Shown piece after piece: positions 3 through 64,000 of a stretch of DNA of 64,000 nucleotides; the first letter of the stretch is position 1; each line of letters begins with the position of its first letter. This stretch comes from Macrostomum lignano. Lineage: Eukaryota. Both the position numbers and the translations under genes were made by a program. The stretch lies in the NCBI GenBank assembly GCA_002269645.1, contig NIVC01002949.1:65006-129005 (forward strand), in the 5' to 3' direction. The notes beneath the pieces were generated by a model, which saw nothing but the letters and a program-made list of their open reading frames with translations, ran no database searches and was not told the DNA's origin.

Positions 3-3729
<3,727 letters not shown>

Positions 3730-8140: not shown

Positions 8141-8221
8141 TCATGTGGGCACTTGACATCTCACTTTTATTATCACATCGCCTTCCACCTGGTACTTTCC
8201 AATATGCAGACCAAAGCCAGG

Positions 8222-16912: not shown

Positions 16913-17953
16913 GGGTGCAGCCGAAATCGTCATATTCAAAATCGTCATATGATGATGACAACTTGAACAAATCTCGAAGACTTAAACATTTAAATATGAC
17001 AACTTTGACCAAAGGCAAGGGTGTATTAATTTTGGATTTTTCTACCTTCAGGCAAAAATCCCTTGCATATGCACCTGTAATTTTTATATTAACTGTGTCA
17101 ATTAATGCTGATTCACCCCTGATTGCTACATCAGCAATCAGGGTCGGCATTGCGTTCACGCGAATTAATCTGGAGAAATCACGCAGACGAATCACAATGT
17201 AATTTTCTTTCTCCTGCTTACTCCAACAGCCGGGTTCTCAAGTCTAATAAATCTAATAAAACTATAAAATAAAACTAACAAGTCTAAAGTGCGCAAAACT
17301 AATAAATAAATTTGAACTAAACTGTCAAATGCAAAAGGAAAAAGACAAGAAAAAGAAAAAGGAAAAGGGGGTTGAAAATTAGGCGGCACATCAAGGCAGT
17401 ATAAATATTAAAAAAAGGAGGTTACAATCAACGGGTGGAGGTGCCGCTGGACACACTACTGGACCAAAAATCCCATGCGTGGAGACTATCAATGGAATGG
17501 CTCACAAACATGCAAGCAACAAAATTAAAACAAAAGTTTTGACCAAGACCTACTTTTCCAACCAAAGGAAGAACAGAACAATTTCTGGAATCTCCAGTCA
17601 ACGGAAATGTGACAAAAATTGAACAATGAGCGGACAAAAATTAAACGTTTGTAGCAGTTTTCCTTTTAAATGAGTTATTAAAGTAATGGTTATTAGTTCA
17701 AATATCAATTAAGTGGCACCCGACTGCCATACATGACTACTGAGAATACACTGTAAATTGTTTTAATTTGTTGGCAAACAAGAACACACTGCCACCATGA
17801 GCTAAGATCCTTTCGCAGCCAATGCAACACAATATGAGGATTTAGTGAATGCAGCATTGTCCAATACTGAGATGATGATGATTTAGATAATTTAGTTGTT
17901 TTTCTCGTAAGCCGCAGATGACGATCTCAAATATGACGACTTCGGCTGGAACC
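16913..17953. mobile_element. Non-autonomous DNA transposon, about 36-bp TIRs, 8-bp TSD (Merlin- or Mutator-like)
   Basis: Left gggtgcagccgaaatcgtcatattcaaaatcgtcat; right reverse complement ggttccagccgaagtcgtcatatttgagatcgtcat; caatggat at 16905-16912 and 17954-17961. Confidence 0.75.
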
Positions 17954-22500: not shown

Positions 22501-25500
22501 TTTAGATAAGGCTCAGTTGCTTCCAAGGAAACGCCTGATTTCCTAAACAAGGCTGTCTCCTAGAAAATGATTGTTTAGAAAGGGTTGGCTGTTTCCTAGA
22601 AAATTGTTAATTGAAGAGGCTTAGCTGTTTCCTAGACTACGATTGATTGAAAACGCTTGGCTATTTCCTAGAAAACGTTTGCTTTCCTAAACAAGGCTTG
22701 GTTGTCTCTTAGAAAATGGTTAATTGGAAGGCTTGTCTGTTTCCTAGAAAATGGTAAATGGAAGAGGCTTGGCTGTTTCCTAGAAAATGGTTATTGGAAG
22801 AGGCTTGGCAGTTTCCTAGAAATGGTTATTGGAAGAGGCTTGGCTGTTTCCTAGAAAATGGTAAATGGAAGAGGCTTGGCTGTTTCCTAGAAAATGGTTA
22901 TTGGAAGAGGCTTGGCTGTTTCCTAGAAATGGTTATTGGAAGAGGCTTGGCTGTTTCCTATAAAATGGTTATTGGAAGAGGCTAGGCTGTTTCCTAGAAA
23001 TGTTTATTGGAAGAGGCTAGGCTGTTTCCTAGAAATAGTTAACAGAAAAGGCTAGGCTTTTTCCTAGAAATGGTTAACAGAAGAGGCTTGGTTGTTTCCA
23101 AGAAATGGTTATTTGAAGAGGCTTGGCTGTTTCCTAGAAATGGTTAACAGAAGAGGCTTGGCTGTTTCCTAGAAATGGTTAACAGAAGAGGCTTGGCTGT
23201 TTCCTAGAAATAATTAACAGAAGAGGCTTGGTTGTTTCCTAGAAATGGTTATTTGAAGAGGCTTGGCTGTTTCCTAGAAATGGTTATTGGAAGAGGCTTG
23301 GCTGTTTCCTAGAAATGGTTATTGGAAGAGGCTTGGCTGTTTCCTAGAAATGGTTATTGGAAGAGGCTTGGCTGTTTCCTAGAAATGGTTAATTGAAAAG
23401 GCTTGATTGTTTTCTAGAAAACGATTGATTGAAAACGCTTTGTTTTTCCTAGAAATCAGTTGATTGACAATGCTTAGTTGTTTCCTAGAAAATGGTTGAT
23501 CGACAATGCTGATTTCCCAGACAAGATCACAGATAGTTCACTCTTGTTTAGATTTTTGCAACTACTCTTTGGTTAGTAGCGTGAACGAACATGGATGCGT
23601 CAAACAGCAGTGCCTTGCGACAAAATTAATTTTTGGAGCAACTAGCAATTTTTTCTTGCCATGCGCACGCTGACGCTCACCCAAAGAGTAGACACTTTTT
23701 TAAGCCATAGACTATAATACAAAAATGGCTTAACTCAATGCAGAGTGAAATATCTAGTGTTTTATTATCTGTGGACAAGATTTAGTTGCTTCCTAGAAAA
23801 AGATTCTTTTTCTTTGGTTTCTTTAAAAGTTTTTTAACCTAGTTTTTGTTTTATTTTTGTTAAGGCATGCTTTTTTCTATACAATCAGAGTCAAAGCACA
23901 TTACTCTTCTATATATGAAGTTCTCATGTACATAATTAACCCGCAAAGCTATATAGCAGATATATAATCTGTTTGAGAATTTTAGCTGGAAGTCCAGGAA
24001 AAAGAAAGGGCCTTTCGCAGCTACGTAGTCTTAAAGTCACTAACAAATAGGTCATTTTCATTTCAGAAATCAATGTATTTTTCTTTTACTAAGTTGGGTT
24101 CCTTAGTAAGGAACGAATATGGGTTAGGATTTTCTTAGAACTACATGTAGATACAGATTTCCTAGAAATAGACTCGAACTTCCTCACTCCGCAGTTGTTC
24201 GCAGTCGATCGGTCGTATTCAGCGACGGCATCCGTCCTGGCGGCGATCTTCTCGAAGATAACGCGGGTGACGCCGACGATTTTCAAGTCAACGACAGCAC
24301 AGTCGGAGGAGTCGCCGCCGCCGCCGCGGTCTCGTCTTTTCCTGCCGAGTCGTCTTCGTCGTCATCCTCGCTTGAGCCGAGCCTGCTACCGGCCGACTGG
24401 GAGAGCTACCCGCCGCACGAGCCTCTGCCAACCGACGATAGCAACTCCGGCGCCGTCGCTCTGTCGCCTGAAGCTGCTCTGCGGAACGGTGGATCGGTCA
24501 GTGTGTTCGTTTTTAGTGGAGGGGATCTAGAAGGGATATCACAATCCCCCTGCGGGACTGTGATCCCTTCTAGATCCCCGTATGGGACTGTGGTCCCTTC
24601 TAGATCCCCGTGTGGGACTGTGATCCCTTCTAGATCCCCGTGTGGGACTGTGATCCCTTCTAGATCCCCGTATGGGACTGTGGTCCCTTCTAGATCCCCG
24701 TATGGGACTGTGGTCCCTTCTAGATCCCCGTGTGAGACTGTGATCCCTTCTAGATCCCCGTGTGAGACTGTGATCCGTTCTAGATCCCCGTGTGAGACTG
24801 TGATCCCTTCTAGATCCCCGTGTGGGTCTGTGATCCCTTCTAGATCCCCGTGTGAGACTGTGATCCCTTCTAGATCCCTGTGTGAGACTGTGATCCCTTC
24901 TAGATCCCCGTTTGAGACTGTGATCCCTTCTAGATCCCCCTGTGGGCCCCCTGTGCGACTGTGATCCCTTCCAGATTCTGTAGTACGACTGGGTAGTGGT
25001 TAGGACGATGTGGCCTGCCAGCTGGGTGTCGCCGACGGCGCGACGGACCAGGCCGGCGCAGCGATATAGCGCCGTGTTTAGACACTGGACCTCGTTGTCG
25101 ATCTTGAAAGCGGCGCGCAGCCTTCGACACACCCTATACCAGTGTCTAACACTTCTGTGTTGCTGTTTAAGTACTAGTGATCCAACTATTGCCATAGTAG
25201 TCTATCCCACCATCAACAGGTAACCTACCAGGTGACGATGAACATCTCTGCTCAATGCCGCTTAGTCAGTCTGCCCTGCTGCGGCCATCCGTCAGCCTGG
25301 CTGCTGGTCACCCGCGGCCTGGACTCGGTTGGTCAAACCGATTTGCTGCTGCTGCTCAGCCGCCGGCCCCCGGCCATTGACGGCACCGACGAATCCATTC
25401 TGCCACCGTTGCACCTGTTGCACCTGGTCTACGCCGTGTACGAACGCGCCTACGCCGGCTCCTGGGCTCGGCACCTGTCATTTGTTGGCTGGCACGCCGG

Positions 25501-27912
25501 CCGGCCGTTGCTAGGCGACCGTAGCAACGCCGGCTGGTTATTCTTCCGGCCAAGCCGGCTGCACTGCCTCCAGAATTTGGGCATGGAGGCTGACTTGGTC
25601 TGTCGGCAGCTTCTCTGCGGATTGCTAGTGCTCAGGTATGCGGCTGTTATTGTGGGCCACTTGCCACACTGGCAAGTCCATACAGATCCCCATGTTAGAC
25701 TGTGATCCCATCCAGATCCCCACGTTAGTCTTTGACCCCATCCAGATCCCCACGTTAGTCTTTGACCTCATCCAGATCCCCACGTTAGTCTTTGACGCCA
25801 TCCAGATCCCCACGTTAGTCTTTGACCCCATCCAGATCCCCATGTTAGACATTGATTCCACCCAGATCCCCATGTTAAACTGTGATCCCATTCAGATCCC
25901 CATGTTAGACTGTGATCCCATCCAGATTCCCATGTTAGACTGTCATCCCATCCAGATTTCCATGTTAGACTGTCATCCCATCCAGATTCCCATGTTAGAC
26001 TTTTATCTCATCCAGATCCCCTTGTTAGACTGTGATCCATCCCATCCCAATGTTAATCGATTAGGTCTATCTACGAGTAGATCCTCAATTTCCATTCGAT
26101 TTCCATCTCAATTCAACAACAAATCGCAGATGGGAAGCGCCCTGGGCCGAGCTGTTCCCGAGCGCCTGTTGCTGCGCCTTGGCTCCGAGAGCCGCCTCTA
26201 CCCATCGCCGCTGGTCTCCGTGCGCGACCGGGCGCCTGTGTTTGGCGAACTCGGCCGCTCTCTGATTGGCCTGCTGGCCGATTTCCGCAACTTCACTTAC
26301 ACCCTGCCTGCCCCGCCCGGCCTGCGCGTCCATCTGCGCGCCGGCTGCACCTCGGTGCTGTGCCCGACCGCCTCCTACGCCGCCGTGCAGAAGGCGCTGG
26401 CCCAGTGCCAGCCGGACGCCAAGGTGCTGGCATTCGGCGCCGAGTTCAGTCCCTCTGCCGACGCCCATCTGGTGTGCCATCAGAATATGGAAACTGGTGC
26501 GGGTGCCGCGGTTTTGTGAACTTTACTTTGGGTATTAGGGTATTCTTGGGAATTTACATTGCGAATCTCATCTATTTATGGAATGTCTCATGTAGATTTA
26601 AAGATCCAAGACATATTTAGATATTATAGATCCCAAGTAGATCATTGAGATCCCATGTAGATCATAGAGATCCCGTGTAGATCATAGAGATCCCGTGTAG
26701 ATTATTGAGATCCCGTGTAGATTATTGAGATCCCGTGTATATCATTGAGATACCATATAGATCATTGAGATCCCACGTAGATCATTGACATCTCGTTTAG
26801 ATCATTGAGATACCATATAGATCATTGAGATCTTGTGTGGATCATTGAGATCCCATGTAGATCATTGAGATCCCATGTAGATCATTGAGATACCATATAG
26901 ATCATTGAGATTCTGTGTGGATCATTGAGATCCCATGTAGATCATTGAGATCCCATGTAGATCATTGAGATACCATATAGATCATTGAGATTCTGTGTGG
27001 ATCATTGAGATCCCGTGTCGATCATTGAGATCCCGTGTCGATCATTGAGATCCCATGTATATCATCTACAGATATCGGCTATCCTGTTTATTTACCCGTA
27101 GATGTTCAGAATCCGTAGTATGCCCCACACGCCCGTCCCGAATCCCAGGCGACTACTCAACCGAGGCTGTCAGCGCGGAGAGCCGCCAGCTGGCCACCAC
27201 GGCCGGCCTGTTTGTTGTGTTCAACGCTGGTGGCTTCGCAGCCAGCAGGGCCAGCATTGTCGAAGACGGCGTCATGGTGCAGCTGACGGACGCCCAGCTG
27301 ACCCAGCTGATGGACTCGCTGAAGGCCATGCGCAACTGGTCGGCCGTCTGCCAGCAGCCGCAGGCGCAGGCCTCGCTCGGATTCTCGGCTGTACCCGACG
27401 GCAGCGAATTGATCGAATTCCGCTGGCTAGACGACGACGAGACGGACTTCGACGGCGATGACGCCGATGTCAGTCCGATTGATGGCGCCCCGCTGACTGG
27501 CGCCGGGCGCCAGGCGATGCCCATAGCGGCCGGCCAGCAGCAGCGGCAGCGGCAGTCCTGCAGGCGGATCCGGTGGACCCTGGCCAGCCTGCTGCGCGAC
27601 GCCGACCAGACCGATGGCACCCCGGCCGACAGTCTGCGCATTGCGGGACACCTGGCCGGTGCCGTCTGTCAAGCTCTAGATGGGTGCGCCCCGGAGCTCC
27701 TGGCCTACGGTCAGCGGATTCTGGCCGTCCGAGCTCGCCTTGGCCCGGACAGCCTGCACTACGAGGCGGCAGCCAGCGGCGGTGCCACCCTGCTGGCCGA
27801 AGGAGCCGCCGAACGGCTCGACCAGGCGCTTGTGCCGGCGCTCAGCGAGCTGGGCCGCGGCCTGCGATCCGAGCTGGCGCTGGAGCTGCGCTTTGTCTGC
27901 CTGTACGCGTGA
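19504..27912 (+). CDS. ZFYVE9: SARA/endofin-type FYVE-domain protein (ZFYVE9/ZFYVE16 family) with DUF3480 C-terminus; one frameshift
   Basis: Exons 19504-19750, 19898-22435, 24195-24496, 25232-25635, 26130-26496, 27149-27912. N-terminal DLDAALDQLE, FYVE (WIPD...RRRHHCRACGRVFC...RVC), SVVFSDGIRPGG, RLLLRLGSESRLYPSP, LLADFRNFTYTLP, HLVC, SIVEDGVMVQ, SPIDG. A -1 frameshift lies near 26157. Confidence 0.9.
20000..21370 (+). repeat. Coding 27-bp minisatellites: (VDSAPVSEP)~30 then (SAPVSAPAY)~18
   Basis: In frame in exon 2; all unit-length variants are multiples of 3; most substitutions are synonymous (gac/gat, ccg/cca, gcc/gct). Confidence 0.85.
22560..23500. repeat. 35-bp intronic minisatellite
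   Basis: Unit gaagaggcttggctgtttcctagaaatggttattg in intron 22436-24194. Confidence 0.93.
24530..24975. repeat. 30-bp intronic minisatellite
   Basis: Unit tagatccccgtgtgagactgtgatcccttc. Confidence 0.95.
25680..26040. repeat. 30-bp intronic minisatellite homologous to 24530-24975
   Basis: Unit cagatccccatgttagactgtgatcccatc. Confidence 0.93.
26620..27065. repeat. 20-bp intronic minisatellite
   Basis: Unit atcattgagatcccatgtag. Confidence 0.95.
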
Positions 27913-43560: not shown

Positions 43561-44799
43561 GTGATTGGGTCTCTTAACAGTGTCAGAGAAAGTCCTAATC
43601 ACACTATTTTGTGTCTCACATGCTGCTCTAACAACGCATTGATTGATTTTTCATGTTAAATTGGTCTTGTCATTATTTTAGACGTTTTTTTTCAAGTAAA
43701 TCGATTATTTCGCATAAATCACAACTTTGCAATCACGATTAGTTTACCTTTCTCAGCATTCCGTTTTCCCTGGATATTTTACCGCTGACATCGACGCGCA
43801 TGTAAATTGCGACTCATTAGGAATTAGGGTACATTGAAGACCGAAATCACCTAATACGCCTTGCCATCCGTTATTATGCCGTCTTCACTGTTAACAATAA
43901 AAATATAACTTAAATAATATTTAAAGCATATCGAAATAAAATTCGCTGTACGTGTTTTACAAAGGTAATTTAGTTAAGCATGCCTACAAAGGTTGGTTCA
44001 AACTTTGTTATAATTTTCATCGATAAGATGTAAAGGACTTTTTTCAACTTTCTCGATACATCCTTGCATTAAGTCTACAAGTACGTAGAAGCAGCAATGC
44101 TCCCTTGCCTAAAAAGATATTTGACAGAAAACGAGAAGGAAGCACTCAATTTTTTTCTAATTGCAAAGAACGGTTTGCTGCGCAAATGTCAATGTGACAG
44201 TCAATACAGTGGAGGCAGATAGTAACATAATTTCATTGTAGAATTTGTTCATACGACCTAAAGTTTTTTGCAACGGTATAAAAAAGCATCATAGGATAAC
44301 AATACTAAAAAAATTCAAACAACAAGACATCTCACTGTTTCCCCAGGAATTGGAGTCTGGTAAGTTGCATTTAAAAATGCATGTACATTGTAGCATTTAC
44401 ATGTATAGCATGCAGATTATATGTAACTAACTTTTGAATGGCCGAAACAGAAATGTATTCATTCCTGGGTGAAAAAACAGTTTAAATAAAATGTCAGTTG
44501 TTGAATATTGAGGTGCTACTTATAGAGTTTGTGAGTTTTGAGAAATATTTTCATGGAAATTTTTTCTTAAAATTGCTGCTTAAGTAAGATATGTTCATAG
44601 TATATATTATTGTATGGTTTCCATTTTAAACTATAGAATTTAGCAATTATTATTTTACTGTTTAGTTTTTATAAAAAAATTAAATGAAGAATAATGCACA
44701 CAAAGAATAATATACTGGCATTTTATTAGTTTATTTTAGCGGTATAATTCTATATAATTTTAGACAAATTATCCGGCTTGCATCAGCCCCCATCGGCCC

Positions 44800-46794
<1,995 letters not shown>

Positions 46795-46929
46795 CGACCT
46801 GGTGCATCGGTCATAATTCAAGCTGTATTTCTGCAAGGACTACTAAATAACAAGGACGCTGAACTCCAAAACTTTGTTTTTATAGTGGAGTCGTTTTTTG
46901 TTTCTTAAATGCAATAGCAGGAAAGCGCT

Positions 46930-52630: not shown

Positions 52631-53624
52631 CTGTCGGTTGCACATGTGTCCATTAGGGCAGGTGTAATCAATTATTATTATTGATTAATAATTAATTAAG
52701 TGAGTGCGTACAGTATTGGCACGCTTGCAGGTGCTCAGGAGTCAGCGGAATGGGCAGAATTGCTCAGCGCTGGTTGCGGAACCACGTCGCCAAGGCGTTG
52801 CGCCAGGGTGCCCGCAGCCCTCCGCAGGAAAAAAGGTGTTTATAAGGCCAAAGATTCAAAACTCGTCTTCAATTCTGTCTGTTTAAAACTTAAGTTCTAT
52901 TGTAAAAAATAAATAAACAGAAGTGGGAGATGGCATTTAAACATGTGAGTTAAGGAGCTCCGTTGATTTTTCATAAAAATCATTTATTATTCAAAGCCAA
53001 CTTTTATTTTAACGTCATCAAGTGGATACAAAAATTTTATATTAAAAACCTTTTATGATCTACGCTACTGAAAGTAGCGCTCTCGCATATTGTTGCGAAA
53101 CAAATGAAACAAGCGAAAACAGCTTAGAGACAGTTTTCACCATAGATTAAATTTTTCGAGGTGAGCACACCCGTGTCTATCCAGCAAGTAGGGGCAGGTT
53201 ACTTCATACATGTACATGGATCTTTGCACTATAAAAATGTGTAGAGCTAAATTGTTATCACAAAATTTGATGGCAAATAATTGGCTGATGAAAGTTTATG
53301 CATGTACCAATAGGCAATCAAGCTAATAGGTTTATAAAAACAGATTACGTTAAGGGGTTAGAACAAAAATATTAATAAATTCCAGTATCAATAGTTGTCT
53401 TGAAATATCACTTCAGACTGTGGTTTCTGCCACTATTCATTAACTTTCTGCGTTGGCTCCAGCAGACTTAGGAGGTGATTTTGATGTCGTCTGAAATAAT
53501 GAAGTAATGCCTCAACTTCAAGATACACATAATAAACGAAATGAGACACCTGCTTCAGAATTTGGACACATTCAGGCTCGATAGACGAACTAATCTTTTA
53601 AGCCTGTGAGGCACCTTTGGATTC

Positions 53625-54535
53625 AGCCTTAAGACACCCTCCACCTCAGCCTTAAGACACCCTCCACCTCAGCCTTGAGACACCCTCCACCTTAGCCTTG
53701 AGACACCCTCCACCTCAGCCTTGAGACACCCTCCACCTCAGCCTTAAGACACCCTCCACCTCAGCCTTGAGACACCCTCCACCTCAGCCTTAAGACACCC
53801 TCCACCTCAGCCTTGAGACACCCTCCACCTTAGCCTTGAGACACCCTCCACCTCAGCCTTGAGACACCCTCCACCTCAGCCTTGAGACACCCTCCACCTC
53901 AGCCTTAAGACACCCTCCACCTCAGCCTTAAGACACCCTCCACCTCAGCCTTAAGACACCCTCCACCTCAGCCTTGAGACACCCTCCACCTTAGCCTTGA
54001 GACACCCTCAACCTCAGTCTGGAGACACCCTCCACCTCAGCCTTGAGACACCCTCCACCTTAGCCTTGAGACACCCTCCACCTCAGCCTTAAGACACCCT
54101 CCACCTCAGCCTTGAGACACCCTCCACCTTAGCCTTGAGACACCCTCCACCTTAGCCTTGAGACACCCTCCACCTCAGTCTGGAGACACCCTCCACCTCA
54201 GCCTTGAGACACCCTCCACCTCAGCCTTGAGACACCCTCCACCTCAGCCTTGAGACACCCTCCACCTCAGTCTGGAGACACCCTCCACCTCAGCCTTGAG
54301 ACACCCTCCACCTCAGCCTTGAGACACCCTCCACCTCAGCCTTGAGACGCCCTCCACCTCAGCCTTGAGACACCCTCCACCTCAGCCTTGAGACACCCTC
54401 CACCTCAACCTTGAGACACCCTCCACCTCAGTCTGGAGACACCCTCCACCTCAGCCTTGAGACACCCTCCACCTCAGCCTTGAGACACCCTCCACCTCAG
54501 CCTTGAGACACCCTCCACCTCAGCCTTGAGACGCC
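53625..54535. repeat. 23-bp minisatellite, array 2 (same family as 51130-51825)
   Basis: Unit ccctccacctcagccttgagaca, about 39 copies. Confidence 0.96.
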
Positions 54536-54629
54536 TCTTCTTTAGCCATCGAGCACCCTCGGCCCTTCGTCTTATCAAGAGACACGACCCATCACCCAGA
54601 TACCAAGCAGAACACCCGCCGCAACCTAC

Positions 54630-57064
54630 CCATGCTGATGCTCTTAGTCGGATATCCGCCAGACGCGATGTTCTGATCCTCAGCAGATGAAGATTTCTCC
54701 CTGCTCACCCGGCAGACTTGCACCACTTTGCGCACATACAGACACAGCAGCACTGCCCCGGCGGCTACCAGGTTAGCAACGAAGATGGCCGGATCGCGCC
54801 ACTTATAGCCGGTGAGGGTGGACACGCAGCCCCAGCACAGCTGAGCCCCTGCGCAGAACAGCAGGCCGAGGGCCACCTGACGCGAGTCGGTCAAATCGGC
54901 GTCCCAGCTGAGCAGCGAGTACACCACGGCAGCCACCAGCAGGCCGGCCGGGTACAGGCAGCTGAGCGCCAGGCCTTCGTCGTAGAAACTCGACGGGCTG
55001 CAACGGCTCCAGGCGACGCCTTCGTAGGCGACCAGCTCGACGCTGTCCGGCCGCTGCAGGATCAGCCACTCGGTGCCGAGCATGGCCGACACCAGGCAGA
55101 TGCAGATGGACAGTCCCAGCAGGCTGACCGGGTGGCTCAGGCCGGTGAAGGATGGACCTTCGCCTGGGGAGCCGGCCGCCCTGTAGATGGTCCAGTTCAC
55201 CACGCTGCGCACCAGCAGGCTGGCGTAGACGATGCAGTAGACCAGGGAGAGGCCGAACCGCCGGATGGTGCACACCACCGGGGTGGCGTGGGCGATGAAC
55301 GCGATGTTGATGGCGAAGATGAGCAGGATGCCGACTAGGCACGCGAAGCCGAGATAGTTGGTGCCGGCCGTGCCCTGCACTTTGCGGGGAAACGCGTAGG
55401 CCAAGAAGCCGATGGCGACCAGGGTCACAAGGGCGCCAAGGGTGGTCAGCGCCAGCAGCACGGCGCCCCACGGGGTTCGAGCCCGGTCCCACACGTCCGG
55501 CTTGGGCAGCAGGGCCAGTGGGTCGCCTGAGTCGCCCGGACAGCCGCAGTCAACGCCGGTCGGACAGGCGGACGACGGAGTGGCAGCCAGCTGGCTGCCA
55601 TCGGGACCGTAGGTGGCCAGGCTGAAGAGTGCGATGAGGGCGCCGATATGTAGTGATGCTGATAGTGTGTCTCAATAGGCTGATAATGTGTCTCAATAGG
55701 CTGATAGTGTGTCTTAATATGCTGATAGTGTGTCTCAATAGGCTGATAATGTGTCTCAATATGCTGATAGTGTGTCTCAATAGGCTGATAATGTGTCTCA
55801 ATAGGCTGATAGTGTGTCTTAATATGCTGATAGTGTGTCTCAATATGCTGATAGTGTGTCTCAATATGCTGATAATGTGTCTCAATATGCTGATAGTGTG
55901 TCTCAATATGCTGATAGTGTGTCTCAATATGCTGATAATGTGTCTCAATATGCTGATAGTGTGTCTCAATATGCTGATAATGTGTCTCAATATGCTGATA
56001 GTGTGTCTCAATATGCTGATAATGTATAATGGCAGGGGGTGTTTGCTGGGACGGGAAATTCCGATTCGAGTTAAACCAGTTAGCCAATCAGAGTCTAGAT
56101 AAAGGGAGTGAGGTGGGTGAATGTACAGGGTAGGGAGGGGCATAATGTGGAAGTGACGGAATTCTAAAAATAGAATCGTACTCACCTCTGGCCAGCTTGA
56201 GGCACGTATCTATTGCGCCAATAGCCAATTTTATTATAGACATATCCGGAGCCCGACCGGACAAAATTGAGCACATCGTAGCCCCGATCTCCGTAGCCAT
56301 CTGTAGTGAACCGGAACAGCAGGCTGTCGTTGCCTAGCCGGCCCTGCAGCACCCGCCACTGCGCGTTGCTAATATAGCGGTAGATAGTTGCCAGGCGAGT
56401 GGCCGCCGGCATCCGGTACAGGCACACATCCGTTGCCGTGGTGCCGCATTCGGCCCGCTGGAAATCGGCGACACCTTTGGCGGCGATGAATGCGGACAGG
56501 ATGGTGGAGTAGGTGCCGCCGTTCTGGGTCAGCGCGCCCGCTGGCAGGCTGCCGCTCGGGTCGCAGACGGTGGCGTACTGAGTCTGGATCACCGAGCTGC
56601 CCGTGAGACGGCACTTCAGCGTGTGCTGCCAGAATTCCTGTGGTGAGCGAGAGAGTTCAGTGTGGGCGTTAGGGTTAGGATTCTCCAAGATTGACAGAGC
56701 TCATTAATATATACTCATGGCGATTGAGGAGAAAAAATTGCCATTTAATACTAGTTGGGATTTTGGCTCTCAATGAGCTCTGCCTCTCCCCTATCAGCCT
56801 CTCTTTTTCCTCCCTCCCTCTCCCCTCTCTCCCTCTCCCCTATCTACTTCTCTCTTTCTCTCTCCCCTCTCTCTCTCCCGTCAGCCAATTAGAATCAAGA
56901 TTGATGGAGTGAGGTGGGTGAATGTACAGGGCAGGGAGGAGCATGGCAGGGAGAGGCATAGCCCCTCTCTTCCTCTCTCCCTCTCTCCTCTCTTCCTCTC
57001 TCCTTCTCTCTCATCATTTTCTTCTGTATAACCCTACACCTATCCCCTGTAAGTTCTCACTTCT

Positions 57065-57103
<39 letters not shown>

Positions 57104-60100
57104 GTAGAGACCCCACACGCTTGAAACCGGATGCCTTTAAAAATTCAATCAACTTTGACACATCGTGACCTCCTCCCTCACCTCCAGCCAGTCCACCGGG
57201 ATGCCCTTCCGTCTGGCCGGCGCCAGTCCGATCTCGGCCACCCAGCGGTCCAGATCGGGTACAGTGAAGTAGGTCTGGCGCAGGGTCACGGCTCCCAGTG
57301 CCGCCGACTCCAGTCCCTGCACCACGGACATCTTGTCCGCCCAGCTGTCCAAGCCGAGCAGCACAAATCGGCCCTGCAGGCCGAGTTCGCGCACCGCGGT
57401 CAGCAGGGTGCGCAGGTCCTGCTCGGGCAGGTAGGCGATCAGCGCGTTGACGTACGCCATCCGGCTTGCCGACTGCAGCGCCGCTTTGGCCTCGGCCAGG
57501 CTGATCGCCGATCCGGCAGCGCCGGCGCCGATGTACTTCATGCAGACCGACTGGCTGCCGTTGCGACGGGCGATCGCCGCTTCGAAGGCCGCCTTGCCGG
57601 CCAAGCCGAACGGGGTGGTATCGTGGATGAGGGACACCACCGACCAGTTGTAGCTGCTGGCCACGTCTAGGAGGGCGTCGATCTGGCGGTTGGCATTGGG
57701 GATGTGGGTGAGCAAGTGGTTGAATGTGGGTGAGCAGGTGGTTGGATGTGGGTGAGCAGGTTGTTGGATGTGAGTGAGCTGGTTGTTAATGTGGGTAAGC
57801 AGTGGTTGGATGTGGGTGAGCAGGTGGTAGATTTTGAGACAGAGGTTAATGAAAGTGCTTATGTAGACTACTTTATCGCTAATCTCGACTACTTCTAGTA
57901 TAAGAATACGAATATTATGACCCGAAAAAATCGCTCCTTACCTGCACACTATCCGGCGGCACCACCCGCAGGAATCTCGGGTAAAATGCTCGACTGCTCA
58001 ATGAAATCGCGGTGGCATCCGGCGACACCACGGTGGAGTCTGGCACGACGGTTGCCAGTCTGGCGCTGACCGCCGAACCGTCGGTGAGGTAAGCGACGGC
58101 GGTCAGCGGGCCGACAAGGTCGGTGAAGCCGGCGTAGCCGCAGATGCCGGTGCCGGACGTGTAGGAGAAGGCGAAGGTGGCCGCCCGAGCCTCCGACTGG
58201 CAGACATCGATGCTGAGGCCGCCGAATTTGAAGCCGGAGACGTCGGGGTCGCTGTTGTTGTTGATGAGGTCGATGGCGTAGTGGAAGGCCAGGAGGTTGT
58301 TGAAGCCGGACTGCAGGTTCATGGGCCGCACAGGGATGCGGACCGGCTGCCGTGGACTGACAGGAACTGCACGAGGTTCAGGTCCATGCTGCTGGAGTTC
58401 ACCTGCATGTACACGGAGCTGGCGGCGGGGTGAGGGTTGGTCTGAATAAGATGGGCGTGATTCAGATAGCGGTAGATATCCAGATTGACATCTGATGGCA
58501 TAAGGTGTCTGCCGGTTTTTCAAGATGTCAGTTTGGCGGTGTATGATATCAGTGGGGGTGTATGATGTCAGTGGGGGTGTATGATGTCAGTGGGTGGTGT
58601 ATGATGTCAGTGGGTGGTGTAAGATGTCAGTGGGTGGTGTATGATATCAGTGGGTGGTGTATGATGTCAGTGGGGGTGTATGATGTCAGTGGGTGGTGTA
58701 TGATGTCAGTGGGTGGTGTATGATGTCAGTTGGTGATGTAGGATGTCAGTGGGTGTGTATGATGTCAGTGGGTGGTGTATGATGTCAGTGGGGGTGTATG
58801 ATGTCAGTTGGTGATGTAGGATGTCAGTGGGTGGTGTATGATGTCAGTGGGGGTGTATGATGTCAGTGGGGGTGTATGATGTCAGTGGGTGGTGTATGAT
58901 GTCAGTGGGTGGTGTATGATGTCAGTGGGGGTGTATGATGTCAGTGGTGATGTAGGATGTCAGTGGGGGTGTATGATGTCAGTGGGTGGTGTATGATGTC
59001 AGTGGGGGTGTATGATGTCAGTGGGTGGTGTATGATGTCAGTGGGTGGTGTATGATGTCAGTTGGTGATGTAGGATGTCAGTGGGTGGTGTATGATGTCA
59101 GTGGTGGTGTATGATGTCAGTGGGGGTGGTATGATGTCAGTGGGTGTGTATGATGTCAGTGGGGGTGTATGATGTCAGTGGGGTGTATGATGTCAGTGGG
59201 GGTGTATGATGTCAGTGGGTGGTGTATGATGTCAGTGGGTGGTGTATGATGTCAGTGGGTGGTGTATGATATCAGTGGGTGGTGTATGATGTCAGTGGGG
59301 GTGTATGATGTCAGTGGGTGGTGTATGATGTCAGTGGGTGGTGTATGATGTCAGTTGGTGATGTAGGATGTCAGTGGGTGGTGTATGATGTCAGTGGGTG
59401 GTGTATGATGTCAGTGGGGGTGTATGATGTCAGTTGGTGATGTAGGATGTCAGTGGGTGGTGTATGATGTCAGTGGTGGTGTATGATGTCAGTGGGTGGT
59501 GTATGATGTCAGTGGGTGGTGTATGATGTCAGTGGGTGGTGTATGATATCAGTGGGGGGTGTATGATGTCAGTTGGTGATGTAGGATGTCAGTGGGTGGT
59601 GTATGATGTCAGTGGGTGGTGTATGATGTCAGTGGGGGTGTATGATGTCAGTGGGTGGTGTATGATGTCAGTGGGTGGTGTATGATGTCAGTTGGTGATG
59701 TAGGATGTCAGTGGGTGGTGTATGATGTCAGTGGGTGGTGTATGATGTCAGTGGGGGTGTATGATGTCAGTGGGGGTGTATGATGTCAGTGGGGGTGTAT
59801 GATGTCAGTGGGGTGTATGATGTCAGTGGGGGTGTATGATGTCAGTGGGTGGTGTATGATGTCAGTGGGGGTGTATGATGTCAGTGGGGGTGTATGATGT
59901 CATTAGGAGTTGTATGATGTCAGAGAGTGATGTAGGATGTCAGTGGGTGTTGTAGGATGACAATGAGTCGTGTATGCTATCAGTGGTGATGTAGGATGTC
60001 AGTGGGTGGTTTATGATGTCAGTGGGTGGTGTATGATGTCAGTGGGTGGTGTATGATGTCAGTGGGTGGTGTATGATGTCAGTGGGTGGTCTATCCACAT

Positions 60101-63100
60101 TCTAATAAATTCCCCATAGCAACCAATTAGACGGGAGCACTCACAGGTTGCGCCCCAGATTCGGGCAGACGGTGTCGCAGGAGCCGGCCAGGCTGCAGTT
60201 GCTGGTCCAGGCCAGGCTGAAGTCGCTGCGCAGTTTTAGCAGTGCCGTATCGTTGTAGGCGCCGACGCTGGAATAGAAGAAGTTGGTCGTTGAGCCCGAT
60301 GATGTGGTGCGCAGCTCGTAGATGTGGTAGCCCCGGTTGCTGTCGCCGGCCGCGTTGACGGAGAAGTTCAAATTGGTGGCGTCGACGAACACGGCCGACC
60401 GGATGCCGCTCTGCACCCACTGGCGCTTCTCGCCGGAGCCGTAGAAGTCGCTGCAGATGCCGTTGTAGTCCGGACCGCAGATGCGCAGCAGAGCCGTGTG
60501 GATGCCCAGCGCGGTGGAGTAGACAGCGTTCACAACATAGAGGGCCAGTGAGTCCTGCAGGTGTCCACGGCGGGGCGGGGATTCTTTTATTTCTTTTATT
60601 CGCAATTCCTTTCAATCAAAAAAGTTTACAGCTCTTTCAAAATGGCATCAGTTTCTTTCAATTTGTTTTCGGTAAATAAAAAATTTGAAAATGAGCCGAC
60701 AATTGGATGTTGTCGACATCATACACAGTTTAACGTGTTAAAGATCAGACACAGAACTCCAAATTCTCCTAAGCTTTTGAAGACAAGATCATAAACTGTA
60801 TGTTTTAAAAACTTTCTCTAGGACTGCCGTCTAGATTAATGAGCTGCAGTTCCAAGAAATCTGTTAATTCAATCGCTCTTTAGACTTTGAGGAGGAGGAA
60901 GATGACGTGATGGAGGGCTGTCACTGACTATTAAACTTCAACTCACCTTGTGCCCTGCTTAACGCGCCAAACGTGCATCTCACTTATGCATACATCATGT
61001 ACTTTCTACCCAAACTTTTACCAATCGCTCAAATATCGTTTTATACCATTTAGTATTTAAATACTTGTACGAGTATCTCTCTAAAACAAGTCTAAACGGT
61101 GTCGCGTCACCTTTTTCGAACAAACGTTCAATTGCAGATCCAGGAGAGGGTCACAAAAGGTCAGCTGACCCCCTTGCCGGGAAAAATCCTAGATCAGCCC
61201 CTACAAACTTTGAAAGATTAATCGAATGAAACTTTGGGTTAGATATCAATATATGACACTAGAATGACAGAATGGGTCGTTGTGTTGAGCAGGGCTGAAC
61301 ACCTGCATGAAAGAGGCCCTAGTTACAAGATTTTTACAGCATCTCATGTGCTCTTATGAAGCTGCCTTGGTTCTAGCGCTCACCTGTGAATAGTTTGCAG
61401 AATCCGTGAGCGACATTGTAGACGAGCTGCATCTTTTACTGTAGTAGGGCGAACTGCTGGACAGGGTGCACTGAAACAGGTGCTCATAGTACTCATTGAA
61501 CCAGGGATTCACCGAAGCGTAACTTGTTGGATTCTTTGACAGCAGGTAGCTTCGCTCGAAGTCAGTGAGGTCGGCGGTCTCGAAGCCGAACGTGATGGCT
61601 CGAGGATAGCGGCCGTTGGTGATTTTGCTCAGCACAGTCTTGCTGTTGCCCCAGTAGGTCGTGCCTGGTTTGCGAGTGAGGTGGGGTTGGTAATGTTGGA
61701 GAGCTGGTGTAAGCTGGAGACTGAGATGAGCGACTGGGAGATGCTGCAGGCAATGTTTTTTTCTAGTGTATCTCCTTTGCAGACCAACACTAATCCTGTT
61801 GCTTCCGGCATACTAACTTCTTCCAGTACTATCGGTGCTTCCTGTACTACCAGGTGCTTCCGGCACTACTAACTTCTTCCAGTACTATCGGTGCTTCCTG
61901 TACTACCAGGTGCTTCCGGCACTACTAACTTCTTCCAGTACTATCGGTGCTTCCTGTACTACCAGGTGCTTCCGGCACTACTAACTTCTTCCAGTACTAT
62001 CGGTGCTTCCGCTAACTACAGTTATTCCCTGTACTTGCAAGTTTTACAACCACTTATTTTCGGCTAGTTTTACTTGCTTGAACTACTTGTAATAATGTTC
62101 TACTGTCTGTCTGACTGTCTCAATTCTTCTCACCCTGGCCTCAACTAGGCAAGCACCTGAATGACCTTGTTGTCAACGAATTTCGCTTACCAATAAACAG
62201 GAACCGATCGTATGTAAGATTATTTCGCGACACGGCGCCGAGAAGTTCAGCGAGGTCGTTAGACTGCAGGAAGGTGACAATCACAGTTGACTGGGGCCTC
62301 TCAGCAGCTCGGAGGCCACTTGATCGGGCGTTAACAGCGGTAAGACCGGTGCGGTTCACCTGTGAGAGTCAATGGCAGGGCCCAGTTGAAACTGGTATTT
62401 AGATTTAATTGGCTTTTTCCTTGCTTGTACAGTTCTGAGATTTAACATTTAGTATATGGACTAGCATTCAATGACCCCCCTGTGGGGGCACCTTTTAAGC
62501 TCCCCGAGCTACATATGCACGTACAGTATACATGTACGAGACACCCCGTGTCATCTTGATCCCATCTCTGTTTGAGCAGAAAATCTACCTGTAGAGTGTG
62601 ACTGATGCAGATGCCTTCGTTAGCGATGGCTCGCTGAACAGACTGCAATCCGCTAGATCCGTAGGCGCCGCGGGAGACAGCACGAATTGTACATTGGTGA
62701 GGCCGTAGCGCTTCAGGAAATCCACAATAGCGTAGGCCACCTTGTCGTCGCTGGGCACCGTGCGCGAGAAATACGGATAGAGCTGCTTGTTGCTAAGGGA
62801 GCTCATGGTGGCCGCGTAGGAGATCACGGGCACCTGCACCACGTTGCGTTACCTGTAAAGGTGGGCAGGGGCGAGTTGAGTTGGTAAAGAAACCACGTCG
62901 TAAACTTTTGTACCAACGTAGCCGGATGACCTATGCTCGATTCCTGGAGACTACTCATATGAGTGATTCTGTGGCTGGCCTGTGAGAGCATCGAGTCTCG
63001 AAATAAAATGAAGGATTCACTGATTACCTAATATACCGGTACATATGAACACCGTTAAGGAGTCCCTAGTTCTAGAAGCATAAAGTAGCTAGTGAATTTA

Positions 63101-63651
63101 GTATATGGACAAGTAATCTACGACCCCCCTGGGACGGCAATTAACAAAAGTCCAAAAATTGCTTAACTCGATACTCATACTTTCGGGCAATAGCCGAAAA
63201 ATCACACCATACTACTCCAGGTACTTAGCATTTATCACTAAACACCAATGGGCTGTCGGTTTAACAATTCCCCTATCACCGCCAAGCGTGGGATGAACAG
63301 GTAATTAAACTAAGTAAAAACCACCCTAGACAGTTGATCTGCCATCTCGGATGTGGAGGCAGCCACGTAAGCCATGACATTTCTGGGTCAATTCGGTTCA
63401 AGCTGGAGTCCCTGAGCACGATGGAGCCCGAGTGCAGATTGGCCACCAGGCTGTCCGTGCGCACAGCTGACGAGCAGGTGTCCATGACAATGCCGCCAAC
63501 CTTAACGCCGCGAAGTTTTCCAGAGAATATCGGACTGGTTTGGATGGATTCAATGGCGTATTTGAACACCTCCGTCAGGAGGAAGCCGTTCTGGCGTTGA
63601 CTCTGCCGCAGCTGAACGGCACAGAGCCGGAATAGTGCACATCGAAGAGGC
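54630..63651 (-). CDS. Class C (mGluR-like) GPCR with at least two tandem Venus-flytrap domains and a 7TM domain; 5' end outside window; several frameshifts
   Basis: Exons (-): 63651-63325, 62852 or 62833-62589, 62359-62191, 61664-61384, 60554-60145 (VFT A); 58418-57942, 57682-57182, 56637-56186 (VFT B); 55621-54630 (7TM); possible terminal exon 53603-53590. Motifs GLFDVH..CG, FKYAI, DTCS, VISYAAT, FSRTVPSD, NPWFNEYYE, VVNAVY; second set FLSVH..CG, FHYAID, DVC, FLRVVPPD, YNWSVVS, GLDSW; 7TM CTIRRFG, YASLLVRS. Confidence 0.88.
55655..56025. repeat. 21-bp intronic minisatellite
   Basis: Unit gatagtgtgtctcaatatgct in intron 56185-55622. Confidence 0.96.
56780..57100. repeat. CT-rich low-complexity tract and (GA)n microsatellite
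   Basis: Pyrimidine runs 56780-57030; (ag)n about 57068-57098. Confidence 0.85.
57715..57830. repeat. About 22-bp short intronic tandem repeat
   Basis: About 5 copies of ggatgtgggtgagcaggtggtt. Confidence 0.8.
58530..60090. repeat. 20-bp intronic minisatellite between VFT A and VFT B exons
   Basis: Unit gtatgatgtcagtgggtggt with 18-20-bp variants. Confidence 0.96.
61795..62010. repeat. About 56-bp intronic tandem repeat, about 3.5 copies
   Basis: gcttccggcactactaacttcttccagtactatcggtgcttcctgtactaccaggt. Confidence 0.9.
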
Positions 63652-64000
63652 CTGCGGGTGAGGAGTGAAAGTATATCTTCTCTCTAACTTTATTTTTTCT
63701 TCATCCTCTCTCAAATAAGTCCTTTTTTGTTCATCGATTTCTTAGCCTACTGGGCGCCCACCTCACTCCGTTTCTATTTATTTTGCCCCATTGGCTGTCA
63801 GCAGCTTTCCTGCCCCACTGGGCACCCACCTCACTCCATTTCTATTCACTTCACCCCATTGGCTGCCTCAGCGGGTTTCCTACGCCACTGGGCGCCCACC
63901 TCACTACATTTCTATCACCTCGCACATTCATTATTACGAGTAGAATTTAGACAAATTGCTTTCGCTAGCTAAATTCTCACCACCAATCAGCAGCTGGCCG

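What the first reader, a model, noticed from the sequence alone, without database searches (positions are those of the whole stretch)
54630..63651. Class C GPCR with tandem Venus-flytrap domains
Seen: a complete VFT A (63651-60145) splices directly in frame into a second complete VFT B (58418-56186), then the 7TM exon. VFT A starts at a splice acceptor, so further upstream exons, possibly more VFTs, lie outside the window. Known: mGluR, CaSR, T1R, GPRC6A and GABA-B each have one VFT per chain and signal as dimers. Inference: a multi-sensor receptor able to integrate two or more ligands or mimic a dimeric ectodomain in one chain; I know of no functional characterisation of this architecture.
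Basis: partly seen in the sequence, partly recalled or inferred. Interest (0 to 1): 0.82.

Follow-up and report, generated by a model that had tools for sequence, protein, structure and literature searches.

The report
Five-flytrap class C receptor gene
The window holds the 3' half of a flatworm (Macrostomum lignano) gene for a giant glutamate-receptor-like GPCR with five ligand-binding "Venus flytrap" domains in one chain instead of the usual one; the same layout is conserved in nemerteans, molluscs and brachiopods, and I found no paper describing it.

Summary
On the minus strand, two complete ANF_receptor (VFT) domains and one 7tm_3 domain are joined by GT..AG introns at exactly the stated coordinates (60145|58418, 56186|55621, 54630). 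The window is the end of Macrostomum lignano contig NIVC01002949.1.

Sister contigs and RNA-seq-derived GenBank models show one about 2,816-aa protein: signal peptide, five VFTs, 7TM. VFT A and B are numbers 4 and 5. One 764-codon exon spans the VFT1-2 and VFT2-3 junctions. In the nemertean Tubulanus, one exon spans the VFT4-5 junction.

The window's raw sequence has seven 1-2-nt indels that break the frame. Against contig NIVC01004834.1 the exons show 0 substitutions and 7 indels, so these are assembly errors, not decay.

Proteins with five VFTs plus a 7TM, in the same module order, occur in Nemertea and Mollusca. A brachiopod model, truncated at both ends, keeps the same module order. Relatives with 3-4 VFTs occur in chelicerates, a hemichordate and amphioxus. 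All are "uncharacterized", and I found no paper on this architecture.

Every module is followed by a conserved three-cysteine mini-linker instead of a cysteine-rich domain. The membrane-proximal VFT5 keeps the loop cysteine that canonical class C receptors use for covalent dimers. The mechanism is inferred, not tested.

The parts
63981..64000 (-). Last 20 nt of the upstream exon (…GQLLIG, end of the VFT3-VFT4 linker and beta-1 of VFT4), with donor G|GTGAGA. Position 64000 is the end of contig NIVC01002949.1.
63325..63651 (-). Carries two 1-nt deletions, at 63595 and 63382, which are assembly errors.
62589..62852 (-). VFT4 exon 2. Carries an inserted G at 62847 and an inserted CG at 62672.
62191..62359 (-). 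VFT4 exon 3. Carries an inserted C at 62328 and a deleted A at 62301, which compensate each other.
61384..61664 (-). VFT4 exon 4 (NPWF…C…C region).
60145..60554 (-). VFT4 exon 5. Ends with the three-Cys linker NCSLAGSCDTVCPNLGRN and a phase-2 donor CT|GTGAGT. The unspliced stop TGA lies at 60143-60141.
58419..60144 (-). Intron between VFT4 and VFT5. It is almost wholly a 20-bp x 80 minisatellite (58524-60094).
57942..58418 (-). A 1-nt deletion at 58323-58325 creates the TGA at 58322-58320.
57182..57682 (-). VFT5 exon 2.
56186..56637 (-). VFT5 exon 3, with a phase-2 donor AG|GTGAGT.
55622..56185 (-). Intron between VFT5 and the 7TM exon. It holds a 21-bp x 17.6 minisatellite (55656-56025).
54630..55621 (-). 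Exon with the three-Cys linker (ACPTGVDCGCP), the whole 7tm_3 domain and the start of the C-tail. Donor G|GTAGGT.
53468..53490 (-). Last coding exon (DDIKITS, TAA at 53470-53468). The preceding intron holds a 23-bp x 39.6 minisatellite (53623-54532).

Best explanation
Shown: window 64000-53468 (minus strand) is the 3' part of one Macrostomum lignano gene, locus family Mlig025303/Mlig023709. It encodes an about 2,816-aa class C (glutamate-family) GPCR laid out as signal peptide, VFT1, VFT2, VFT3, VFT4, VFT5, 7TM, short tail. The contig ends inside the gene.

The seven frame-breaking indels in the window are consensus errors at a PacBio contig end, not mutations. Each VFT is followed by a conserved three-cysteine mini-linker, not a nine-cysteine CRD. 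The five modules are only 21-28% identical to each other. Their order is shared with nemertean and mollusc proteins, so the arrangement is old and under purifying selection.

Inferred mechanism (about 40% for the full picture):
- VFT5 plays the role of the single VFT in ordinary class C receptors. It sits on the 7TM through a short disulfide-stapled stalk and carries one unpaired loop cysteine where mGluR and CaSR form their intersubunit disulfide. The receptor is therefore probably still a covalent homodimer, with ten VFTs in all.
- VFT1-4 are additional ligand-binding modules. In M. lignano, VFT1, VFT4 and VFT5 keep most of the alpha-amino-acid-binding residues (Ser/Thr, Thr/Ser, Asp, Tyr/Phe, Asp). 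VFT3 is partly degenerate and VFT2 fully degenerate. No module keeps the Arg/Lys that bind glutamate's side chain, so the ligands are likely amino acids or similar small molecules other than glutamate.
- In each module the lobe-2 cysteine that in mGluRs bonds to the CRD is conserved. Together with the three linker cysteines this makes an even set, so closure of one flytrap could be passed mechanically to the next.
For: Identity and gene models:
- Homolog search and cluster listing name M. lignano proteins.
- L002 equals the reverse complement of the window end.
- PAA70592.1 and PAA46492.1 read …GRNLSVYMQ… and …AGQSLATYG… and carry 4 ANF_receptor plus 7tm_3 although 5'-truncated.
- A0A1I8I0J7 supplies the signal peptide and VFT1-4.
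- Contig NIVC01004834.1 carries aa 1-2813 colinearly.
- The annotation is purely transcript-based.

Evidence that needs no splicing inference:
- A 764-codon open exon in three contigs spans the VFT1/2 and VFT2/3 junctions.
- One Tubulanus exon spans VFT4/5.
- A 9,030-nt Logan contig holds one uninterrupted 2,812-codon ORF with 5 ANF plus 7tm_3.

Assembly error rather than decay:
- Window exons versus L003 show 0 mismatches and 7 indels in 3,873 nt.
- Over the whole 10.8 kb there are 3 mismatches versus 47 gap openings.
- Divergent copies L001 and L003 differ by 26 synonymous and 7 nonsynonymous changes, pN/pS 0.09.

Conservation:
- About 28 representative clusters are longer than 1,800 aa, nearly all with 3 or more matched stretches.
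- Named members come from Nemertea, Mollusca, Brachiopoda, Chelicerata, Crustacea, Hemichordata and Cephalochordata. The ones scanned with Pfam (nemertean, bivalve, one unidentified transcript contig, two chelicerates, hemichordate, amphioxus) have 3-5 ANF plus 7tm_3.
- Module-by-module positional orthology.
- Three-Cys linkers are conserved at all five positions in 9 species.
- The five binding residues are tabulated per module.
- Structural cysteines are conserved in about 45 of 45 modules, and the loop Cys occurs only in VFT1 and VFT5.
- The closest solved relatives are mGluRs.
Against: - No experiment or long-read cDNA for M. lignano was available to me. Transcript support comes through a StringTie/TACO assembly that its authors say sometimes merges neighbouring genes into one transcriptional unit.
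- An older annotation (ML2, UniProt A0A1I8I0J7 and A0A1I8IJG1) splits the gene exactly at the minisatellite intron.
- The mechanism rests on sequence only. The binding residues were read from a MAFFT alignment at 20-30% identity.
- The cysteine-pairing scheme rests on counts, not on a structure.
- VFT1 has a second extra cysteine that may simply pair with its loop cysteine.
- AlphaFold2 on the nemertean VFT4-VFT5 pair (5-sequence alignment) gave pTM 0.49 and pLDDT 30-35 in the linker, which does not support a rigid relay. With so shallow an alignment it does not exclude one either.
- G-protein coupling is untested, and the 7TM is divergent (best PDB E-value 5e-10).
Confidence: 0.8

Rival explanations
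1. There are two genes. VFT A is the end of a secreted four-VFT protein that stops at the unspliced TGA (60143-60141), and VFT B plus the 7TM is an ordinary single-VFT class C receptor starting in or after the minisatellite.
For: The ML2-based UniProt models are split exactly this way: A0A1I8I0J7 has 2,001 aa and no 7TM, and A0A1I8IJG1 has 842 aa and starts MPSDVNLDIY…. The TGA directly overlaps the donor. M. lignano transcriptional units can contain several genes.
Against: - A0A1I8I0J7 ends at …GRN without the Leu-stop, so it is a truncated model, not a terminated one.
- The 842-aa model begins with 30 non-hydrophobic residues read from intron sequence and has no signal peptide.
- RNA-seq-based models join A and B in one ORF in the two intact copies read (PAA70592.1, PAA46492.1), and the window's own frame-damaged model uses the same junction.
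- The spliced linker is colinear with orthologs, CP…RYM.
- In Tubulanus the same junction is inside one exon.
- A Logan contig has one 2,812-codon ORF with all six domains.
Confidence: 0.03
2. The copy in this window is a decaying pseudogene: one of several homeologous copies that has picked up real frameshifts.
For: Seven frame-breaking indels lie in 3.9 kb of coding sequence. The genome is a recent polyploid with redundant copies. The annotated product here (PAA54223.1) reads VFT A out of frame.
Against: - Against contig NIVC01004834.1 the same exons have no substitutions at all. The flanking 10.8 kb, including the minisatellite, has 3 mismatches versus 47 gap openings. That is the signature of the same haplotype assembled twice with long-read indel errors.
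- The damaged stretch is the last 10 kb of a Canu contig that was polished only with Pilon.
- Other contigs carry their own private frameshifts elsewhere in the gene.
Confidence: 0.07
3. The long proteins are gene-prediction fusions of tandemly duplicated single-VFT receptors, as happens in vertebrate OlfC/CaSR clusters.
For: Such fusions exist in the same search results: the Polypterus 'CASR, partial' models of 2,496-3,927 aa with 7-11 matched stretches.
Against: - There is only one 7tm_3 for every 3-5 ANF domains, and no 7TM remnants between VFTs.
- VFT-VFT junctions lie inside single exons.
- Modules are 21-28% identical to each other but match the same ordinal module across phyla.
- The three-Cys linkers are conserved.
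Confidence: 0.01
4. The five-VFT mRNA exists, but shorter isoforms are also made. The VFT4 and VFT5 blocks both end in phase-2 donors compatible with the 7TM acceptor. Exon skipping (VFT4 directly to 7TM) or SL trans-splicing at 58418 could therefore give receptors with different sensor sets.
For: Both donors are phase 2 and the 7TM acceptor accepts either. 38.8% of M. lignano genes are trans-spliced. Amphioxus, Limulus and crayfish relatives are listed with several isoforms.
Against: No model with such a junction was seen among the nine cluster members. A B-only product would lack a signal peptide.
Confidence: 0.12

Closest known systems
Metabotropic glutamate receptors (class C GPCRs, groups I-III, and invertebrate 'class IV' mGluR-like receptors)
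   Same: - They are the best sequence matches for every part: VFT4 to mGluR3 at 4e-56, VFT5 to mGluR5/4 at about 1e-33, and the 7TM to mGluR2/3 at about 5e-10.
- All mGluR VFT structural cysteines are conserved, including the lobe-2 Cys that bonds to the CRD.
- The backbone-binding Ser/Thr/Asp/Tyr/Asp set is partly kept.
- Like class IV mGluRs (PMC6307864), it lacks the Arg78/Lys409 equivalents.
   Different: - Five VFTs per chain instead of one.
- No NCD3G cysteine-rich domain, only a three-Cys stub homologous to the first residues of the CRD.
- A divergent 7TM.
GABA-B receptors
   Same: Class C receptors whose VFT joins the 7TM without a cysteine-rich domain.
   Different: They have one VFT per chain and act as obligate heterodimers. 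There is no detectable closer sequence relationship: no GABA-B chain appears among the 30 PDB hits to the 7TM. The flatworm linker keeps three conserved cysteines.
BvgS-family bacterial sensor kinases
   Same: They are a receptor with tandem VFT domains in one chain. The membrane-proximal VFT transmits to the transmembrane segment, and the whole works as a dimer (PMC4352136, found). This is the nearest functional precedent for 'works like'.
   Different: They are bacterial and use a different periplasmic-binding-protein subfamily. They have two VFTs and signal through a histidine kinase rather than a 7TM/G protein. They are not homologous as an architecture.
Ionotropic glutamate receptors (ATD + LBD)
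   Same: Two clamshell domains in series in one eukaryotic receptor chain. The distal one (ATD, also ANF_receptor-like) is modulatory and the proximal one gates the membrane domain.
   Different: The output is an ion channel. The two clamshells belong to different subfamilies, and there are two layers, not five.
Fused gene models of tandem OlfC/CaSR clusters (e.g. Polypterus 'CASR, partial')
   Same: Very long predicted proteins with many ANF_receptor hits.
   Different: They are recognisable artefacts. They were not analysed further here.

Membership tests
Class C (glutamate-family) GPCR | 7tm_3 heptahelical domain | tested here: met
   Pfam PF00003 at E 2.2e-24 on the window exon, covering 244 of 251 profile positions. 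The same result holds in the full-length models.
Class C (glutamate-family) GPCR | Extracellular ANF_receptor/VFT domain N-terminal to the 7TM | tested here: met
   PF01094 in A and B. Both align end to end with mGluR VFTs.
Class C (glutamate-family) GPCR | One VFT per chain | tested here: not met
   Five ANF_receptor stretches plus one 7tm_3 in the composite protein and in orthologs.
mGluR/CaSR/T1R-type class C receptor | Nine-cysteine CRD (NCD3G) between VFT and 7TM | tested here: not met
   No NCD3G hit in any Pfam scan at E <= 0.01-0.1. Only C-x2-6-C-x1-2-C is present.
mGluR/CaSR/T1R-type class C receptor | Conserved VFT disulfide cysteines and the lobe-2 Cys that links to the CRD | tested here: met
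   The mGluR3 C57, C99, C240, C361, C373, C412 and C419 columns are Cys in 42-45 of 45 modules.
mGluR/CaSR/T1R-type class C receptor | Loop cysteine forming the intersubunit disulfide of the VFT dimer | tested here: inconclusive
   A Cys is present in the equivalent loop of VFT1 and VFT5 in 9 of 9 species and absent from VFT2-4. Whether it forms an intermolecular bond cannot be told from sequence.
Glutamate-binding mGluR | Residues contacting glutamate's distal carboxylate (mGluR3 R68, K389) plus the backbone-binding set S151, T174, D194, Y222, D301 | tested here: not met
   R68 and K389 are absent in essentially every module of all 9 species (a single Arg at the R68 column in Tubulanus VFT5; K389 in none). 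The backbone set is kept conservatively in full in VFT1, at 4 of 5 positions in VFT4 and VFT5 (in VFT5 the fifth is a conservative Tyr-to-Phe change), at 2 of 5 in VFT3 and at 0 of 5 in VFT2 of M. lignano.
Class C (glutamate-family) GPCR | Couples to heterotrimeric G proteins | not testable with these tools
   This needs heterologous expression.
BvgS-type tandem-VFT sensor | Bacterial type-2 periplasmic-binding-protein VFTs fused to a histidine kinase | tested here: not met
   The domains are ANF_receptor/Peripla_BP_6 and 7tm_3. The resemblance is functional only.

The most novel reading that the evidence does not exclude
An ancient bilaterian family of class C GPCRs has been overlooked. It has five VFTs in spiralians and three to four in the chelicerate, hemichordate and amphioxus models scanned. 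Up to five separately evolving flytraps are chained by disulfide-stapled three-cysteine linkers onto one 7TM. The receptor, probably a dimer with ten flytraps, reads several different small ligands at once and relays their closure mechanically down the chain. That would make it a combinatorial chemosensor unlike any characterised GPCR.
Probability: 0.3. Interest if true: 0.9.

Novelty: new variant of a known kind. Interest (0 to 1): 0.78.

Why it matters
Models of class C activation (mGluR, CaSR, GABA-B, T1R) assume one flytrap per subunit and a flytrap dimer that re-orients to switch the 7TM dimer. A conserved receptor family with five flytraps per chain raises three questions:
- How is closure of a distal flytrap sensed at the membrane?
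- Can several ligands be integrated in one molecule?
- What replaces the cysteine-rich domain as the lever?

The family spans flatworms, nemerteans, molluscs, brachiopods, chelicerates, crustaceans, hemichordates and amphioxus. Its absence from the usual model animals (vertebrates, Drosophila, C. elegans) was not tested here, but I found no paper on it. That gap would help explain why it has been missed, and it means a whole branch of metazoan chemoreception or neuromodulation is uncharacterised.

M. lignano is transgenic-tractable and RNAi-tractable, so function can be tested directly.

There is also a practical lesson. The gene is mis-annotated in this contig through assembly indels, and it is split in two in another annotation through the minisatellite intron.

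Tried and rejected
1. Pseudogene reading of the frameshifts. Rejected after the comparison with L003 (0 substitutions, 7 indels).
2. An in-frame 93-nt mini-intron (58402..58310, CAG|GTGAAC…CTGCAG|) that would bypass the TGA in B1. Rejected because it removes beta-1, which is homologous to orthologs. The intact copies simply have one more base there.
3. My first choice of acceptor for exon A2 (GTGCAG|GTGCCC). Replaced by TTTACAG|GTAAC once the intact copies showed that an inserted G in the window creates the apparent TAA.
4. Translating whole frames for Pfam.
5. The look-up of encoding contigs for A0A1I8I0J7. Nothing on record.
6. Testing whether the Logan transcript contig is the Tubulanus neighbour gene. 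No nucleotide match, so its organism remains unknown.
7. First pN/pS attempt. It was misframed because of approximate exon ends and was redone. The L004 extraction stayed misframed by 1 nt, so it was ignored.
8. AlphaFold on the M. lignano VFT4+VFT5 composite. It was run on the Tubulanus ortholog instead, and the inter-domain geometry came out unresolved.
9. Literature. Eight searches covered multi- or tandem-VFT class C receptors, ANF_receptor plus 7tm_3 architectures and the locus names, and two likely papers were read (PMC6307864, PMC12716839). No description of this architecture turned up. Subscription-only literature was not searchable.
Full report
**What is in the window**

On the minus strand between 63651 and 54595 there are stop-free segments that translate to class C receptor sequence.
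- Pfam gives ANF_receptor for the block 63651-60145 (E 3.9e-28).
- It gives ANF_receptor for 58418-56186 (E 4.4e-18).
- It gives 7tm_3 for the 359-codon open segment 55671-54595 (E 2.2e-24).
- Both flytraps are complete. VFT A aligns with the mGluR3 flytrap from its first strand to the first two CRD cysteines (E 4e-56). VFT B aligns with mGluR4 over 13-470 of 510 residues (E 5.5e-32).

Reading the junctions base by base gives these exons, all with GT..AG introns:

| Exon | Window coordinates |
|---|---|
| A1 | 63651-63325 |
| A2 | 62852-62589 |
| A3 | 62359-62191 |
| A4 | 61664-61384 |
| A5 | 60554-60145 |
| B1 | 58418-57942 |
| B2 | 57682-57182 |
| B3 | 56637-56186 |
| 7TM | 55621-54630 |
| last | 53490-53468 |

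- The A5 donor (CT|GTGAGT) is phase 2 and overlaps an unspliced TGA. Joined to 58418 it reads …CPNLGRN-L-SVYMQVN…, in frame.
- The A-B intron is essentially one 20-bp x 80 minisatellite.

**The frames are broken in this window, and why**

The raw sequence needs seven corrections. Four are frame-breaking indels in VFT A. Two more, at 62328 and 62301, compensate each other. One sits in VFT B, 32 codons after the junction, and produces a TGA.

I first considered a pseudogene. The window is the reverse complement of the last 64 kb of M. lignano contig NIVC01002949.1, assembly Mlig_3_7.

Against another contig of the same assembly, NIVC01004834.1 (L003):
- The 3,873 nt of exons differ by 0 substitutions and 7 indels.
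- The whole terminal 10.8 kb, minisatellite included, differs by 3 substitutions and 47 gap openings.

That is the same haplotype assembled twice with long-read indel errors. The assembly is Canu plus Pilon only and is known to be highly redundant. The other contigs have private frameshifts at other places in the gene.

Two truly divergent copies (L001 and L003) differ by 26 synonymous and 7 nonsynonymous changes, pN/pS 0.09. The gene is therefore under purifying selection. The GenBank product annotated on this window, PAA54223.1 (967 aa), reads exons A4-A5 out of frame but uses the 60145->58418 junction.

**One gene, five flytraps**

- Cluster members of the homolog hits include PAA70592.1 (2,394 aa) and PAA46492.1 (2,429 aa). 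Both are 5'-truncated. Each has four ANF_receptor stretches plus 7tm_3 and contains …CPNLGRNLSVYMQVN…, …VPQAGQSLATYGPDG… and …KSISMDDIK(I/V)TS.
- UniProt A0A1I8I0J7 (2,001 aa) supplies a signal peptide and four flytraps and stops, without a stop-codon residue, at …CPNLGRN.
- The composite is 2,816 aa. tblastn places residues 1-2813 colinearly on the single contig NIVC01004834.1.
- The Mlig_3_7 GenBank annotation is built only from RNA-seq (StringTie/TACO plus a de novo transcriptome, ORFs by TransDecoder). These junctions are therefore transcript-supported.

Three observations need no splicing inference:
1. A 764-codon open exon, present in three contigs, runs from the end of VFT1 through the linker, all of VFT2, the next linker and half of VFT3.
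2. In the Tubulanus polymorphus genome one exon (aa 1933-2430) spans the end of VFT4, the linker and most of VFT5.
3. A 9,030-nt Logan contig (SRR25726911) carries one uninterrupted 2,812-codon ORF with five ANF_receptor plus 7tm_3.

The older ML2 annotation splits the gene at the minisatellite intron, into A0A1I8I0J7 and 836-842-aa models that start in intron sequence without a signal peptide. I regard that as an artefact.

**An old, conserved family**

An exhaustive HMMER search with VFT5+7TM found 1,580 relatives. The best are not ordinary mGluRs. They are 2,200-2,870-aa proteins matched in 5-6 stretches, with the query aligning to their C-terminal 750 residues at 25-29% identity.

Named members, all 'uncharacterized' or 'hypothetical':

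| Group | Species |
|---|---|
| Nemertea | Tubulanus polymorphus |
| Bivalvia | Sinanodonta, Argopecten |
| Gastropoda | Babylonia, Physella, Bulinus |
| Cephalopoda | Octopus |
| Brachiopoda | Lingula |
| Chelicerata | Limulus, Centruroides, Dinothrombium |
| Crustacea | Procambarus |
| Hemichordata | Saccoglossus |
| Cephalochordata | Branchiostoma |

- Pfam gives 5 ANF + 7tm_3 for Tubulanus, Sinanodonta and the Logan protein; 4 + 1 for Saccoglossus, Limulus and Centruroides; and 3 + 1 for an N-terminally truncated amphioxus model.
- The five M. lignano modules are only 21-28% identical to each other.
- Each module best matches the module at the same ordinal position in Tubulanus, the Logan protein, Babylonia and Physella. 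VFT1 and VFT4 do so in all eight proteins tested. Lingula keeps the order too.
- The five-module order therefore predates the split of flatworms, nemerteans, molluscs and brachiopods.
- Giant Polypterus 'CASR' models in the same list are ordinary fusion artefacts and a different matter.

**Anatomy relevant to mechanism**

- All five positions after a flytrap, in all nine aligned species, carry C-x2-6-C-x1-2-C. About ten residues later comes the next beta-1 strand (Y-x-P-G-D-x-x-I-x-G-x-F-x-V-H). The last linker (CP-x-GVDCGC in flatworm and nemertean) leads to TM1.
- No NCD3G domain is detected. HMMER aligns the last two linker cysteines with the first two CRD cysteines of mGluR3.
- The mGluR structural cysteines, including the lobe-2 Cys (mGluR3 C240) that bonds to the CRD, are Cys in about 45 of 45 modules. 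VFT4 has exactly 10 cysteines, an even number if C240 and the three linker cysteines form two disulfides. This pairing is inference.
- A cysteine in the loop where mGluR and CaSR make their intersubunit disulfide is present only in VFT1 and VFT5, in 9 of 9 species. VFT5 then has an odd count of 11. I take this as a sign that the receptor still dimerises through its membrane-proximal flytrap.

Binding residues were mapped through mGluR3, with numbering checked against the 8tqb alignment:

| Module (M. lignano) | S151, T174, D194, Y222, D301 equivalents |
|---|---|
| VFT1 | T, S, D, Y, D |
| VFT2 | A, A, A, A, V |
| VFT3 | D, S, S, Y, N |
| VFT4 | S, T, D, Y, T |
| VFT5 | S, T, D, F, D |

- Tubulanus keeps S, T/S, D, Y, D/E in all five modules.
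- The glutamate side-chain binders R68 and K389 are absent throughout, apart from a single Arg at the R68 column in Tubulanus VFT5.
- The likely ligands are therefore amino acids or similar molecules other than glutamate, at several sites per chain.

AlphaFold2 on the Tubulanus VFT4-VFT5 pair folded both flytraps (mean pLDDT 71). It left the linker at pLDDT 30-35 with pTM 0.49. With a five-sequence alignment this neither supports nor excludes a fixed inter-flytrap geometry.

**Comparison with what is known**

- By sequence this is an mGluR-like class C receptor. It fails two defining features of that group: one VFT per chain and a CRD. It also fails the glutamate-specific residues.
- Lack of a CRD resembles GABA-B, but there is no closer sequence tie.
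- Functionally the nearest precedents for flytraps in series are bacterial BvgS and the ATD-LBD layers of ionotropic glutamate receptors.
- Eight literature searches and two targeted readings, one a metazoan mGluR phylogeny and one a 2025 survey of glutamate-family domain architectures, mention only single-ANF architectures.
- The sequences are public but unnamed. I rate it a new variant of a known kind.

**Verdict**

The mechanism is inferred only.

Noticed in passing
window 53623-54532, 55656-56025, 57700-57828, 58524-60094, 61800-62010, 63738-63915: Six of the gene's ten introns in the window hold a different minisatellite (units of 23, 21, 22, 20, 56 and 68 bp). The A-B one has about 80 copies here, and that intron is about half as long in the homeologous contig L001. 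The rest of the window is similarly full of 15-70-bp tandem arrays.
   Followed up: partly
window 53207-64000 versus L003 (NIVC01004834.1) 15568-26432: The last 10.8 kb of this contig duplicates part of another contig of the same assembly, with 3 substitutions and 47 indels. The same haplotype has been assembled twice, and this contig end is poorly polished, which corrupts the annotated protein PAA54223.1.
   Followed up: yes
window 60283-60294 (exon A5): A 12-nt in-frame insertion (…SSG-STTN-FFYSS…) is shared by the window and L003 and absent from L001 and L004. It is a real allele or homeolog difference, unlike the 1-2-nt indels.
   Followed up: partly
UniProt A0A1I8I0J7 (P0001) and A0A1I8IJG1 (P0010): The ML2-based annotation splits this gene into a 4-VFT protein without a 7TM and a 1-VFT receptor that starts in intron sequence. 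The split falls exactly at the minisatellite intron.
   Followed up: yes
L007 (Tubulanus polymorphus OZ123227.1) 1-1531 and 3001-12556: The nemertean has two multi-VFT receptor genes in tandem, with products of 2,802 and 2,787 aa. The M. lignano protein matched two groups of mollusc proteins differently in the module comparison. The family has therefore duplicated in several lineages.
   Followed up: partly
window 44764-46800 (+): An EF-hand, neuronal-calcium-sensor-like gene lies here. The corresponding 191-aa gene sits on the opposite strand downstream of the receptor in three fetched copies: L001, L004 and L002 (L002 is this window's own contig end). That is conserved local synteny among homeologs.
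   Followed up: partly
window 3-4000 (+), 8138-9566 (+), 19486-27909 (+): Other genes in the window are an SH3-SH2-tyrosine-kinase (Src-like) gene, a CAP/SCP-domain gene and a FYVE + SARA_C (ZFYVE9/SARA-like) gene. The last has a 1,007-codon exon that contains a long internal repeat.
   Followed up: partly
window 54700-54790 (TM7 of the 7TM exon): By eye, TM7 lacks the class C P-K-x-Y motif (…LLCLYVRKVV…). Molluscan orthologs have (I/G)P(L/I/V)RK and the nemertean has FFRK. The TM3 basic residue is Arg here and Lys in orthologs.
   Followed up: no
P0035, P0039, P0056 (Polypterus senegalus 'CASR protein, partial'): These 2,496-3,927-aa fish models have 7-11 flytrap matches and look like fused tandem OlfC/CaSR genes. 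They are a reminder that long multi-ANF models need exon-level checks.
   Followed up: no
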